Shown here piece after piece: positions 59,031 through 64,000 of a DNA stretch of 64,000 bases (positions are counted from its first letter, which is position 1; every line of letters begins with the position of its first letter). A model generated the notes under the pieces. That model saw only the letters and a list, made by a program, of their open reading frames with translations, did no database searches and was not told the origin of the DNA. Where the stretch lies: assembly GCA_950097015.1 (NCBI GenBank), contig CATNEN010000031.1, forward strand, positions 2,418,001-2,482,000. Direction: 5' to 3'. The DNA is from Macrostomum hystrix (Eukaryota; Animalia; Platyhelminthes). A program made the translations under genes and the position numbers.

Positions 59031-59481
59031 ATCAGTGAATAAATCTTCAAATGCATTACAAACATACTAAATTAAGCACGTTCAATAGGCTTATGACAAA
59101 GAATCTAAACAAGAATACTGAGAATCTCCTGTTTATTTTTCAAGTCAACGCAAACTTCAACGATAAAATTTTATTTTACTGCACAGAGTAAAAACGAGTA
59201 CTTCTACTTGCGGTAGTATTAAATGAAAGCAAAATTATAATTTTTAACATCCGAAAAACCCGAAAACTTAGCAAAAAGGGAATTTAATTAAATGCAGATA
59301 TTAATAAATTTAAGAAAATATATATATCTGTTTCCTAGTCAATAATTGCCACATGTTCTTAGAAATTAGAAACCATTTTCTAAGAAACAAACCTTAAGTT
59401 GCGTGTTTTTTCTAGAGCCTAGTTTTTCAAGATCTAGACCCATTCACAGTCACAGCCACAGTCTGGCAAAGTCTACCGAAG

Positions 59482-60616
59482 TCACTCGCCGACGCCAGCC
59501 TCGCCCTGCGCCGCATGGAAGGTGCGCAGTCGAAGCAGCCAGGCGGACCAGGCCGGCAGCAGCTGGTCCAGCCCGAGCCGGAGGCAGGCGGCCGGCGAGC
59601 CGTCTGGATAGGCGTAAACAAGCATAGCCGAGGTCAACAACGGCTGCTGCTGCTGCTCATTTTCTTGGCAACGTCGCATCTGATTCAACGCGCCCAGATA
59701 GGAGGCCAGTTGCAGAGGCGCGTCGTAAGCGTCGCGCAGGCCAACAATGCGACGCTCGTGCGCTGTCTTCCACTCGATCAGCAACTCCGTGCCCGCCGGA
59801 CCTTCACTACCACCGTCGGCGGCGTCAGCAACAGAAGCGGGCCGCAGTCGGGCTAGACAATCGAGGCGACCCTTGTAGCGCAATGGTCGATGTATAACCT
59901 GAGCCTCCTGGGCCTGCACCGACTCCAGGGTGCGAAGGATCTGGAGAGAGGAAAATGCTCTTCTTTCTTCTCTGGATGGATCTGGGTGGTGCAAACTCAT
60001 CATCGAGTTCTAGATGTTGCAACCTGATCATCGGGATCTGGATGGTGTAACCTGATCATCGGGTTCTCAATGGTGCAACCTATTCATCGGGATCTGGATC
60101 GTGCAACCTGATCATCGGGATCTGGATAGTGCGACCTGATCATCGGGATCTGCATGGTGCAACCTGATCATCGGGTTCGGGGTTTACGCCAAGGCAGGCA
60201 CAACTGACCGGTAGCACGGACTGGAAGAAGCCGGTAATTTCGGCCTCGGGCTGAGCGTCACCAGTCTCCAGATAGTCCCAGATGCTGCGATGCAGCCTGG
60301 CGCCGGAGGTTAGCAGGCCGGATTTGTACTTGGCGAACGCATCCGGCCCCAGGGCCAGTTGTTTTTTGCGCAGCCAGCGAGCCAGAGCGGCTGCGCTCTC
60401 AGGCGGCCTGGTTCGGTCCAGCACGGTGGTCACGCTGGGCAGCTGAGTCTCGACTCCTGGCCTCTCAGTCAAGACCACCTGCGCTGACGGCGAAATGCCT
60501 AAGAATGGATAATCATCTGAAGCGAATGCGGCGGCTGCAGAGGTTGACACAGCCGAGCACAAACGCTGGCGCCCAGAGCTGCTTCGGCGGAGGAAGCCGA
60601 AGAGATGTGATACAAG
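59482..60616 (-). CDS. MGME1: Mitochondrial genome maintenance exonuclease 1 (PD-(D/E)XK nuclease), no genomic ATG seen
   Basis: Exons 60616-60209 and 59940-59482 (phase 0, GTCAGT..CAG intron). LPSVTTVL, ARW..LGPDAF, GARLH, E..V.H..L.YKGRLDC, IEWKT, DAPLQLASYLGALN, YAYPDGSPA, WLLRL match MGME1. Confidence 0.9.
59975..60178. repeat. About 28-29-bp degenerate minisatellite in the MGME1 intron
   Basis: About 7 copies of CCTGATCATCGGGATCTGGATGGTGCAA variants. Confidence 0.85.
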
Positions 60617-62017
60617 CTGCGGTATTTGTGGCTATTTTTGTACACCGTTTGAATACAGATTTGCACTTTAAAATTTGAGACTAAGAATAACCAAATCTAG
60701 GGTTATTATGTAAAGCCATACAAGTATAGTAAACACTATAGTATTGTTTTAGCACTGTGCCCATTGGCAAATTATGCAGTAAAGATCCCGAATACAGCAC
60801 TCTAGCTTGTAAAACAGTCCAACATGGCCCTGTCCCATATATAATCTCTTCTTTGTCTTGTCCTTTCTGTCTAATCTTGGAAAAGTCTAATTTGTTACAT
60901 TTATCTACAACATTGCAACTGTTGTCTGTAACTGTAAGTTCTAATTCTGATGTGTGCGTATAATAATTGATACATTGAGGTATAGTTGACATATGTAGTC
61001 ATTAAAACTAATAGTCCCATGCATATCAGCAAGTGCATAATATGGTTAAAGGTGTACAACTGAAAGCAAGTTATTTATTTCTATATATGTATGAGCTACA
61101 TTAATATAGCCTATTTTATTATTATTATATAGTTACTATATACCTAGTTGGTGCTTAAAAATATATCTCAGTAGCTAGACCTAATTAGTTGAAAAAGTTA
61201 AACACATGTAATGTAACAAAAAAACAAACAAAAAACATATGTGCTAATGCTAATGTGTAAGGAATCTAACAAGTAACCTATGTGGCTATGTAGAATACAA
61301 CCCATTTCAAAAGAATAGTGTTAGGCAGTTAATAGCCACTGTACTAATAGATCATACCTATGTTATAGTGATCATGATATAATTTTCAAATATTTTTGCA
61401 ACAAATAGGTCATTAATTAGCATTATATAATGTTATCATTTCCTGACATAAAAGATAAAAATATTTGTTTGTAAAAAGAAACCAGATTGGAAAAAATAGC
61501 AATGCTAGCTAGGCCTGTGTTTAAATTTGTTGAACCTAAACTATTTGCATACACTTTTTTCTACCTAAACATTATCCATCCTGAGTAGACTAAGTAGATA
61601 ACCAAGTCTAGAGATTGGCATACAAAATAGAAAGAAAAGAAACAACAATTATTGAATAAGTGTTATCAGCTATTACAGTGGCTATTGCTATCTGCTTAAG
61701 TGGAATGTTACCTTTCCATAGATCTAATTTTTTCTTTACTTTACCCGAATTTGACTTATTTATAACCAAGTATTTATTGTGATACTAGGCTACATAGCCC
61801 CACTCCAACCCTAAACAAAAAATGCGAATTTTCTTATCTTAAATTAAAAAGTACTTTAGTAGCTACATAATATTTCCAGAACAATAATGCTTTTAAGTAT
61901 TGCAAGGCAACTTAGTTTTCCTAAGCATTTTATACTAGGGTATATTAGTATATAGACCTAACTCAGCGCCTAAGTACAACAGTTAGCCAAGTAAGCTTAT
62001 GTAACGTGTAGGGTACC

Positions 62018-64000
62018 ATGTGGAAACATCAAACACACCATAGTCTACACTCAAGACTGCTAAAAGCGTACGCATCTAAACGGCCAAAGGGCCAAGGCCG
62101 CCGCAACGTGCCCGTCAATGCCGCCATCCGGCCGCTGTTCATCAGCACCGATGATGCCAGGAGCCGACCGGCCGCCGAGACTGTCAGCGCCAGGTGCACG
62201 AGCGCCAATGAGGCTGCACCCTCCCTGGACGCTGGCAGTGAGCCACAGCAGCAGCAGCAGCAAACTGACTTGAAGCAGATGGTGAGCATGCTGTTGCCCC
62301 TGTTCACCCGCTCTCTGACCCAGGTGATTGTGCGGGCCCTGTCCAGACCGCCTGGTGAGCTCCTCACGGTAGAATCGACCAGTAAAATGGTTGAGGACAT
62401 TGTGCGGGCTGTCCTCCAGGACGTGTCTGGCATGGCCTCCGCCGCCACCGGGGTCGTGGGCCCAGGCAGCTAAACCAGAAAACTGGAAATTCCTTAATTT
62501 AAATGGGAACCCCATTACCCAGACAACGGGTCTGAAAATTATGCACCTCAACTGCAGAGGGTTTCACCCGAAAAGCAGAGAACTCACCCAATGGGTCATT
62601 AGTCAAGAGATAGACATTGCTCTCTTCTCTGAAACCATTCTCAAGAGTTCGCACACGGTCCAGATCCCTGGCTACTCCATCATCCGATACGACACTCCGC
62701 ATGTCAGACGCGGCTTGCTCCTTGCTCACTCACCGCGCGTCAAACTCACCAATGTTCGCTTGCACTACGACAACGTGAACCATGAAGCCATCTCCTGCAC
62801 CGTCAGCCTGTCTGACAACTCTCACGGTGCCGACTTTAATCTGGCTCTGGTGTACAGGTCTCCGGCACCTTACCACCTGAACCTGAACCTACTCAAGAGC
62901 CTGGTCTCGCGCAGACGCAGTGTTCTCCTTGGCGACCTCAATGCCAGACACCGCTTCCTTGGCGGTGACAGCAGCAACAACAAGGCTGGCCATGAGCTGT
63001 ACGACTGGCTCTCTGAAGGTCCGACCTCGCCCACCATCCTCAATCAAGTTGGCCAGTTCACCAGAATCGCCACCAAGAATGGCGTCACTTCCAGGAATGT
63101 CTTGGACCTCGGCCTGGCCACGGAGGACTTTCTGCCCTTTGTGCAGGACTTTGCAGTCGGTCCTGACCTGGACAGCGACCACCTGCCAATCATCCTCACC
63201 CTCAACATTCAGTCGGCAAAGTGGGCAGGTCCCGCTAAGCCGAAAAACTTTTCCAAAACCGACTGGGATCAGTTCAGGCTGAGAATTAGTGAAGCCCTTC
63301 TTCCTGACCAGCCGACTCGCCTATCGAGTGCTCAGCAAATCGACGCCGAGGTCGAGCTCATCACAAAAGCCATCCACACGGTCATTGAGTCGACTGTGCC
63401 AGACTGTGGTGGCCGAAATGCTCTGCCCAAGCACATCCTTGAGCTGATCAAAGAGCGCCGACGACTCAGACGCCTCTTCAACAGCACCGGGGATGAAAAC
63501 TTTAAAAGGCTGGCCAACCAAATGGCCAACAGGATCAAAAGGGAAATCACTTCCTTCCAGAGCGGCAAGCTCACCAAGCTGTGTGAGAATGTTGTCGAGA
63601 ACAGCAAGAACAGCAAGGTCAAGAACTTCTGGCATGACACCAGGAAGCTGATGGGCAAGTTCAAGCCCAGCTCCATTCCAACCCTCACTTCGGGTCAAAC
63701 CAGTGCGCACACTGATCTGGAGAAAGCGAACCTTCTCGCTGCCACTCAGGACTCAAAGATGCGCCCAGTCCCATCAACTTGTGACCAGCTCAAACAGGAG
63801 GTGGCCGAAGTGGCCAAGTTCATCGCTTTCTATCCGATTCCGGCCGACATCAATGGCATAGCCACTCACCCGCTTGAAGCCGCATTCACTGTAGCCGACA
63901 CAGTGTGGGAGCTTGAGCACCTCAAGCCTGATGGAGCACCCGGGCTGGATAAGATTCCCAATCGAGTGCTCAAACTCGGCCTTGAAAGCGTGGCGATCAC
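62018..64000 (+). mobile_element. Non-LTR retrotransposon (LINE, I/Jockey-like): ORF1 C-terminal remnant plus open ORF2 (APE endonuclease leading into RT), truncated by the window end
   Basis: ORF2 is open from 62373 (ATG at 62541) to 64000 by hand translation: LKIMHLNCRG, DIALFSET, VYRSP, LLGDLNARH, LDL, DSDHLPI, KNFW, EKANLL, APGLDKIPN. ORF1 remnant at 62018-62473. Confidence 0.9.

What the first reader, a model, noticed from the sequence alone, without database searches (positions are those of the whole stretch)
60500..60660. MGME1 appears to lack its own start codon; the spliced-leader AUG may supply it
Seen: the MGME1 frame is open back to a stop near 60632 with no in-frame ATG. The first in-frame Met lies after the catalytic DC..EWK motifs, and the first downstream ATG (near 60517) is out of frame. 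A CAG acceptor at 60619-60617 is followed in phase 0 by LVSHLFGFLRRSSSGRQRLCSAVS, an Arg/Ser/Leu-rich acid-free peptide resembling a mitochondrial presequence. Established: flatworm spliced leaders end in AUG, which can act as the initiator (shown in Schistosoma). Inference: trans-splicing creates MLVSHLFGFLRR..., so mitochondrial targeting of this mtDNA nuclease would depend on the SL.
Basis: partly seen in the sequence, partly recalled or inferred. Interest (0 to 1): 0.75.

Follow-up and report, generated by a model that had tools for sequence, protein, structure and literature searches.

The report
MGME1 start codon supplied by spliced leader
In this Macrostomum flatworm the mitochondrial DNA nuclease gene MGME1 has no start codon of its own, and RNA assemblies show the trans-spliced leader, which ends in AUG, joined exactly and in frame at its first exon; this habit is already known in flatworms, here confirmed for one more gene.

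Summary
A two-exon MGME1 homologue lies on the minus strand. Its frame is closed by TAG at 60634-60632 and has no in-frame ATG until after the catalytic D...EWK motif.

The genome carries many exact copies of the 35-nt Macrostomum spliced leader (SL), which ends ...TTGCATG|GTAAG. Contigs from three runs of one study skip the GT..AG intron. They stop matching the genome at the CAG acceptor (60619-60617) and continue into the SL. The mRNA therefore reads ...TTGCATG|CTTGTA..., which gives MLVSHLFGFLRR...

Two checks support the architecture:
- The gene is single-copy in this genome.
- One M. lignano orthologue has the same build: an in-frame stop, a TTGCAG acceptor in phase 0, no ATG, and a database annotation of "partial".

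A second M. lignano copy carries a genomic ATG at exactly that codon.

Three things are inferred, not shown: that translation starts at the SL AUG, that the N-terminus targets the protein to mitochondria, and that no minor 5' isoform exists.

SL-AUG initiation has been known in flatworms since 2006. This scan has already noted the same pattern for other mitochondrial genes elsewhere in this genome. I file it as a new member of a known kind, of modest interest.

The parts
60632..60634 (-). In-frame TAG that closes the MGME1 frame five codons upstream of exon 1
60617..60619 (-). CAG trans-splice acceptor. The context CCGCAG only partly fits the M. lignano trans-acceptor motif [T/C]TNCAG.
   Evidence: Contigs of X3, X4 and X5 leave the genome here and continue into the SL. 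The motif is from PMC8629364.
60209..60616 (-). Exon 1, 136 codons in phase 0 from its first base, with no in-frame ATG. Holds the N-terminal part of the MGME1 core (LPSVTTVL...GARLH).
60518..60616 (-). Presequence-like stretch: with the SL Met, 34 acid-free residues MLVSHLFGFLRRSSSGRQRLCSAVSTSAAAAFAS (4 Arg, 9 Ser/Thr)
   Evidence: Composition only; no targeting predictor was run.
60514..60516 (-). First genomic ATG of the mRNA. It is out of frame (+1) and opens MIIHS*.
59941..60208 (-). Cis intron of 268 nt, GT..AG, holding a 28-nt tandem repeat (59978-60175)
   Evidence: Joint 59940/60209 in contigs of X3, X4 and X5; repeat
59485..59940 (-). Coding part of exon 2, 152 codons, with the PD-(D/E)XK catalytic motif (LDC...IEWK)
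59482..59484 (-). TGA stop codon
59328..59481 (-). 3' UTR as far as the longest contig reaches
   Evidence: X4 contig runs 59328-59940

Best explanation
The MGME1 pre-mRNA is transcribed from somewhere in the AT-rich 1.4 kb upstream. Its outron is removed, and the 35-nt Macrostomum spliced leader is trans-spliced to the CAG acceptor at 60619-60617. The SL's last three bases, AUG, then sit directly before codon CTT (60616-60614) in phase 0. That AUG is the only AUG in the SL and the first one in the mRNA. It serves as initiator for a protein of about 289 residues, MLVSHLFGFLRR..., whose acid-free, Arg/Ser/Leu-rich N-terminus most likely acts as a mitochondrial matrix-targeting presequence for this mtDNA nuclease.

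Shown here:
- the gene structure
- the lack of a genomic in-frame ATG
- an SL ending in ATG|GT in this genome
- the SL joined in frame at the predicted base in RNA-derived contigs
- the same architecture in an M. lignano orthologue

Inferred:
- initiation at the SL AUG
- mitochondrial import and cleavage of the presequence
For: Junction and intron:
- The SL junction appears in contigs of three runs. The loose end behind 60617 is ATGCAATAAATTGAGTCTTCGCA on the + strand, 23 nt in X3 and X5 and 9 nt in X4. It is the reverse complement of the SL's 3' part.
- All three contigs carry the GT..AG intron joint 59940/60209.
- No SL-like sequence exists in the window itself, so the leader comes from elsewhere.

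The SL in this genome:
- 149 matches in all at up to 3 mismatches, 23 of them exact, to the published 35-nt SL against 0 for the reversed control.
- One gene copy reads ...TTGCATG|GTAAGA.
- The SL holds one ATG only, at its end.

Frame and need for the SL AUG:
- Frame and absence of other starts.
- The gene is single-copy, so no second copy with its own start can stand in.

M. lignano comparison:
- PAA70184.1 (68% identical, annotated 'partial') has in-frame TAA, TTGCAG, then ILSRLIRAVRLSSSRRLLC... with no ATG.
- The second copy has a genomic ATG at exactly that codon. This marks that codon as the start of the protein.

Literature:
- All reported flatworm SLs end in AUG.
- In S. mansoni the AUG is in frame in 28% of trans-spliced transcripts, and more than 40 cDNAs need it (Cheng et al. 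2006, as cited in PMC12582326 and PMC9851317).
- PMC10468722 notes the terminal ATG for M. hystrix and M. cliftonense.
Against: - The runs are not on record as RNA; that is inferred from intron removal and the attached SL.
- All three runs belong to one study.
- Contigs drop rare variants, so a minor isoform with a cis 5' exon cannot be excluded.
- Translation start was not measured.
- The AUG context (U at -3, C at +4) would be weak by vertebrate rules.
- The helical hydrophobic moment of the N-terminus is not above shuffles (524 of 2000 reach it).
- No targeting predictor was available.
- The acceptor context CCGCAG fits the published trans-acceptor motif only partly.
Confidence: 0.85

Rival explanations
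1. A cis-spliced upstream exon, or an unspliced longer 5' end, supplies a genomic in-frame ATG. The SL form would then be only one isoform or a by-product.
For: Contigs cannot show absence. The 1.4 kb upstream was not covered by any contig, which is also what a rare isoform would give. Flatworm acceptors are often shared between cis- and trans-splicing (PMC12582326).
Against: An unspliced 5' end is closed by the in-frame TAG at 60634-60632. All three assemblies end in the SL at this acceptor, and none lies on 60618-61391. The M. lignano orthologue has the same stop-plus-acceptor build, and its database model is also start-less.
Confidence: 0.05
2. Translation starts at a near-cognate codon inside exon 1 (for example in-frame TTG 60562-60560), and the SL AUG is bypassed.
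For: An in-frame TTG exists. Non-AUG initiation is documented in many organisms (PMC9851317).
Against: A scanning ribosome meets the SL AUG first, and it is in frame. The residues between it and the TTG are presequence-like in both Macrostomum species despite sequence divergence. One M. lignano copy places a genomic ATG at the SL-AUG position, not further down.
Confidence: 0.03
3. The SL AUG does start the protein, but the N-terminus is not a cleavable mitochondrial presequence. It could instead be a disordered tail, or target the protein elsewhere or to two places.
For: Amphipathicity is not significant against shuffles. No predictor was run. The N-terminal region does not align with that of other MGME1 proteins.
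Against: Both Macrostomum N-termini keep an acid-free, Arg/Ser/Leu-rich make-up (net +4 and +5 before the first acidic residue) while their sequences diverge. That is how presequences evolve. MGME1 is a mitochondrial matrix enzyme in human; this rests on my own knowledge and on the name of the PDB entries. Homologues with their own Met also begin with basic, acid-poor stretches.
Confidence: 0.1

Closest known systems
Schistosoma mansoni trans-spliced mRNAs that use the SL 3'-terminal AUG as initiator (Cheng, Cohen, Ndegwa & Davis 2006, J Biol Chem 281:733; cited in PMC12582326, PMC9851317, PMC5832876)
   Same: The SL ends in AUG, is joined in frame to an ORF that has no start of its own, and so supplies Met1.
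   Different: The host is a free-living macrostomid, not a parasite, and the gene is MGME1. No paper in the searched library holds both 'MGME1' and 'spliced leader'. Initiation at the AUG was shown experimentally in Schistosoma and is only inferred here.
Human MGME1 (PDB 5zyt, 5zyu, 8xa9), a PD-(D/E)XK mitochondrial DNA exonuclease
   Same: The core is conserved in both exons, including LPSVT, the His of G-x-R-x-H, LDC and (D/E)WK.
   Different: The region N-terminal to the core is much shorter: about 57 residues, against about 105 or more in the crystallised human chain numbering. There is an insert of about 16 residues before EWK. The start codon is not encoded by the gene.
Alternative trans-splicing that sets mitochondrial targeting in Trypanosoma brucei (isoleucyl-tRNA synthetase, PMC3273800; SL trapping, PMC2916883)
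   Same: The site of SL addition decides whether an N-terminal mitochondrial presequence is translated.
   Different: In trypanosomes the AUGs are genomic, and the SL only includes or excludes them. Here the SL itself carries the AUG, and only one acceptor was seen.
Other start-less mitochondrial genes noted by this scan in the same genome (TOP3A, cardiolipin synthase, D2HGDH; also TFAM-like, MRM2 and ATP5S notes not yet followed up)
   Same: The same build: a presequence-like first exon that begins at an acceptor in phase 0, with no ATG.
   Different: They are different genes on other contigs. Those notes are unchecked by me.

Membership tests
MGME1 / PD-(D/E)XK nuclease | Significant sequence similarity to characterised MGME1 | tested here: met
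   Exon 2 has E 8.5e-11 and exon 1 has E 3.8e-6 to human MGME1 chains. Named MGME1 proteins of Lamellibrachia and Notodromas are among the hits.
MGME1 / PD-(D/E)XK nuclease | Catalytic D ... (D/E)-X-K motif present | tested here: met
   LDC...IEWK aligns with human LDC...IDWK.
MGME1 / PD-(D/E)XK nuclease | Pfam PF12705 (PDDEXK_1) match | tested here: inconclusive
Exons were searched apart and gave no Pfam hit. Homologues P0051, P0053 and P0054 carry PF12705.
MGME1 / PD-(D/E)XK nuclease | Mitochondrial localisation and ssDNA exonuclease activity | not testable with these tools
   Needs experiments.
Flatworm mRNAs that start at the SL 3'-terminal AUG | The host SL ends in AUG followed by a GU donor | tested here: met
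   Exact SL copies in the genome. Gene copy L005 reads TTGCATG|GTAAGA.
Flatworm mRNAs that start at the SL 3'-terminal AUG | SL seen joined to this mRNA at an AG acceptor | tested here: met
   Loose ends at 60617 in X3, X4 and X5 equal the SL's 3' part.
Flatworm mRNAs that start at the SL 3'-terminal AUG | SL AUG in frame with the main ORF, and no other in-frame AUG before essential residues | tested here: met
Flatworm mRNAs that start at the SL 3'-terminal AUG | Initiation at the SL AUG demonstrated | not testable with these tools
   Needs ribosome profiling or a reporter. Indirect support: the M. lignano copy g3 has a genomic ATG at the same codon.
Mitochondrial matrix-targeting presequence | N-terminal 20-40 residues free of acidic residues, rich in Arg, Ser, Leu and Ala, with net positive charge | tested here: met
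   34 residues, 4 Arg, 0 Asp/Glu. The M. lignano orthologue has 24 residues and 5 Arg.
Mitochondrial matrix-targeting presequence | Amphipathic helix; predictor score; MPP cleavage site | tested here: inconclusive
   Maximum 11-residue hydrophobic moment is 0.62, reached by 524 of 2000 shuffles. Arg at position 19 could serve as an R-2/R-3 site. No TargetP or MitoFates was available.

The most novel reading that the evidence does not exclude
Taking Met1 from the SL may not be scattered at random in Macrostomum but favoured among nuclear genes for mitochondrial proteins. Their presequence exons would begin directly at a trans-splice acceptor, which would tie synthesis of the mitochondrial proteome to SL supply. 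The SL genes sit in the rDNA repeats, according to earlier notes of this scan. The state would be evolutionarily labile: one M. lignano MGME1 homeologue has swapped the CAG acceptor for a genomic ATG at the very same codon.
Probability: 0.15. Interest if true: 0.6.

Novelty: new member of a known kind. Interest (0 to 1): 0.3.

Why it matters
- **Annotation.** MGME1 and similar genes look truncated in flatworm gene sets. Both M. lignano models are filed as 'partial'. Pipelines that trim the SL or demand a genomic ATG will mis-call them.
- **Biology.** Production of an mtDNA-maintenance nuclease would depend wholly on trans-splicing.
- **The M. lignano pair.** One copy has an acceptor and the other an ATG at the same codon. 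This gives a natural experiment on how genes move between SL-supplied and self-encoded starts.
- **Limits.** The mechanism itself has been known since 2006, so the gain is one confirmed case plus a lead, not a new principle.

Tried and rejected
- **Pfam on the single exons:** nothing useful.
- **Phytochelatin synthase of S. mansoni (PMC3101182):** it came up as a possible precedent for an SL-supplied mitochondrial start. The paper says its transcripts are not trans-spliced, so I dropped it.
- **Cheng et al. 2006:** the paper is not held. I cite it only through papers that cite it.
- **Logan-derived full-length proteins of other Macrostomum species (query P0001):** the search found only the two M. 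lignano copies, so there is no cross-species RNA evidence.
- **DNA alignment of the 5' ends of the window gene and M. lignano:** too diverged upstream of DDYPFLG to be informative.
- **Pfam on neighbouring ORFs:** nothing.
- **Run X1 (organism A):** gave only a 177-nt piece inside exon 1, with no junction.
- **Hydrophobic-moment test:** not significant.
- **Operon hypothesis (MGME1 as a downstream gene):** not supported. The nearest upstream coding-looking stretch begins 1.4 kb away, its longest ORF is on the opposite strand, and M. lignano operon spacing is taken as under 1 kb. Not excluded.

Full report
**1. What is in the sequence**

A GC-rich (about 60-65%), two-exon gene lies on the minus strand inside AT-rich (about 28%) surroundings.

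- **Exon 1.** Read from TAG at 60634-60632, the frame gives *PQIPQ then LVSHLFGFLRRSSSGRQRLCSAVSTSAAAAFASDDYPFLG.... The Q just before LVSH is the CAG at 60619-60617, so a splice after that AG starts the exon at 60616 in phase 0.
- **No start in exon 1.** Exon 1 runs 60616-60209 (136 codons) and has no in-frame ATG. Its two ATGs (60516 and 60342) are in frame +1 and open 5- and 10-codon ORFs.
- **Exon 2.** It runs 59940-59485, with TGA at 59484-59482. It carries LDC...IEWK, and its first Met comes only afterwards.
- **Identity.** Both exons match human MGME1 structures (E 8.5e-11 and 3.8e-6), with LDC/IEWK aligned to LDC/IDWK.
- **Copy number.** The gene is single-copy in the 220-Mb assembly.

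**2. The host and its spliced leader**

Earlier notes of this scan name the genome a Macrostomum flatworm; one note says M. hystrix, which I did not verify. I tested the point that matters.

- The 35-nt SL published for M. lignano (PMC8629364) occurs in exact copies on many contigs, often about 11.6 kb apart. The reversed-pattern control gave none.
- One copy reads ...CGGTCTCTTACTGCGAAGACTCAATTTATTGCATG|GTAAGACACC. That is an SL exon ending in ATG, followed by a donor.
- The SL has no other ATG.
- The M. lignano orthologue is only 68% identical, so the window is from another species of the genus.

**3. RNA evidence**

Four runs of one study held 61-68% of the sampled words of 59480-60700. That share fits a spliced transcript lacking the intron and upstream DNA. 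I laid three of them (X3, X4, X5) on 59200-62700, together with X1 of a second study. Each of X3, X4 and X5 has one contig of 915-1031 nt with these features:

- It covers 59328/59381/59458 to 59940.
- It skips 268 nt (CT..AC on the + strand, which is GT..AG on the gene strand).
- It resumes at 60209 and matches up to 60617.
- It then continues with letters that lie on nothing in the stretch: ATGCAATAAATTGAGTCTTCGCA (23 nt in X3 and X5, the first 9 in X4).

The reverse complement of those loose letters is TGCGAAGACTCAATTTATTGCAT. Together with the G at 60617 this is the last 24 nt of the SL. The G of the CAG acceptor and the last G of the SL coincide, which is why the aligner ran to 60617. The mRNA reads ...TTGCATG|CTTGTATCA whichever way the junction is drawn.

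The window holds no SL-like sequence, so the leader is added in trans.

Caveats:
- The runs are not on record as RNA. Intron removal and the SL show that they derive from RNA.
- They come from one study.
- Contigs show presence, not absence. No contig lies on 60618-61391, but a rare alternative 5' exon cannot be excluded.

**4. Consequence for the protein**

The SL AUG is the first AUG of the mRNA and is in frame, giving M + 136 + 152 = 289 residues. If it were skipped, the next AUG opens MIIHS*. The next in-frame AUG lies beyond the catalytic motif. So the whole enzyme depends on the SL, not only its targeting.

Initiation at the AUG is inferred here. Its experimental precedent is S. mansoni: the SL AUG is in frame in 28% of trans-spliced transcripts, and more than 40 cDNAs need it (Cheng et al. 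2006, as reported in PMC9851317; see also PMC12582326 and PMC5832876).

**5. The N-terminus**

- MLVSHLFGFLRRSSSGRQRLCSAVSTSAAAAFAS is 34 residues without Asp or Glu, with 4 Arg and 9 Ser/Thr.
- The helical hydrophobic moment is unremarkable: 524 of 2000 shuffles reach it.
- No targeting predictor was at hand, so "presequence" rests on composition, on MGME1's known mitochondrial role, and on comparison.
- The M. lignano orthologue begins (M)ILSRLIRAVRLSSSRRLLCSTGT (24 acid-free residues, 5 Arg, moment 0.77) before the shared EDYPFLG/DDYPFLG.
- Composition is kept while sequence and length drift, and the frame from the acceptor onwards is kept. That is the usual behaviour of a translated presequence.

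**6. Comparison with M. lignano**

- **Copy g1.** PAA70184.1 (Mlig003194g1, 'partial') lies on L008. There the frame reads TAA TTG CAG | ATT CTC TCT CGG... with a TTGCAG acceptor that fits the published [T/C]TNCAG trans-acceptor motif. Exon 1 again has no ATG.
- **Copy g3.** A second copy (Mlig003194g3, also 'partial') is 97% identical in this region. It differs in three adjacent columns exactly at the acceptor: TTGCAG has become TTCATG. That removes the AG and puts a genomic ATG in frame at the very codon where the SL AUG would sit, giving MILSRLIRAVC...
- **Reading.** If real, this is independent support that the protein starts at that codon. It also shows that SL-supplied and self-encoded starts can replace one another.

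**7. Rivals**

- An upstream cis exon, a near-cognate start, or a non-mitochondrial N-terminus are each possible but poorly supported (see the Rival explanations section).
- An operon reading is unlikely. The nearest coding-looking region upstream starts 1.4 kb away, and its longest ORF is on the other strand.

**8. Novelty**

- The mechanism has been known since 2006.
- No paper in the searched library holds both 'MGME1' and 'spliced leader'.
- This scan has already noted the same build for TOP3A, cardiolipin synthase and D2HGDH on other contigs of this genome, with TFAM-like, MRM2, ATP5S and TPMT-like genes as leads not yet followed up.
- It is therefore a new member of a known kind.
- The open question is whether mitochondrial genes are over-represented among SL-AUG users. 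That needs a genome-wide test and was not done here.

Noticed in passing
L009:380-385 versus L008:2980-2985 (M. lignano, NIVC01001979.1 and NIVC01001259.1): The two M. lignano MGME1 copies are 97% identical here but differ in three adjacent bases at the acceptor. Copy g1 has TTGCAG (SL acceptor) and copy g3 has TTCATG, a genomic in-frame ATG at the codon where the SL AUG would sit, with the AG lost. Both are annotated 'partial'. This may be a real swap of start-codon source or an assembly error.
   Followed up: partly
P0001 versus P0050 (M. lignano proteins): The model PAA70184.1 goes out of frame after LGALNQM. Its C-terminus matches the +1 frame of the window's exon 2. Copy g3 keeps the MGME1 C-terminus. 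The cause may be a frameshift in the assembly, or a decaying homeologue.
   Followed up: no
window:59978-60175 and window:58615-59030: A 28-nt tandem repeat (7 copies) fills most of the MGME1 intron, and a 29-nt repeat (14 copies) lies about 300 nt beyond the 3' end of the gene. One low-depth 167-nt contig of X3 lies on the intron repeat; it may be unspliced RNA or a copy from elsewhere.
   Followed up: no
window:56950-57850 (+): Long tandem array whose overlapping ORFs repeat GGVAVYIKGSVVWRYI(L/S)KD(R/Q)WCGGIY, with strong GC skew (0.5-0.6). Probably a satellite rather than a gene.
   Followed up: no
window:61947-62473 (+): Divergent neighbour starting about 1.4 kb upstream of MGME1. It has an ATG ORF of 151 aa with a poly-Gln run, no Pfam match, and low-depth contigs on 61947-62119. 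Other contigs match 62091-62455 at about 97% and run on into unrelated sequence, which suggests a paralogue elsewhere.
   Followed up: partly
G000:C15, C17, C42: Exact SL copies recur about 11.6-11.7 kb apart on three contigs. This fits the earlier scan notes that the SL RNA gene sits in the rDNA repeat. Many diverged SL copies ending ...GCATA or with a TCTCTTTTTT variant form other arrays, for example a 927-nt period on C39.
   Followed up: no
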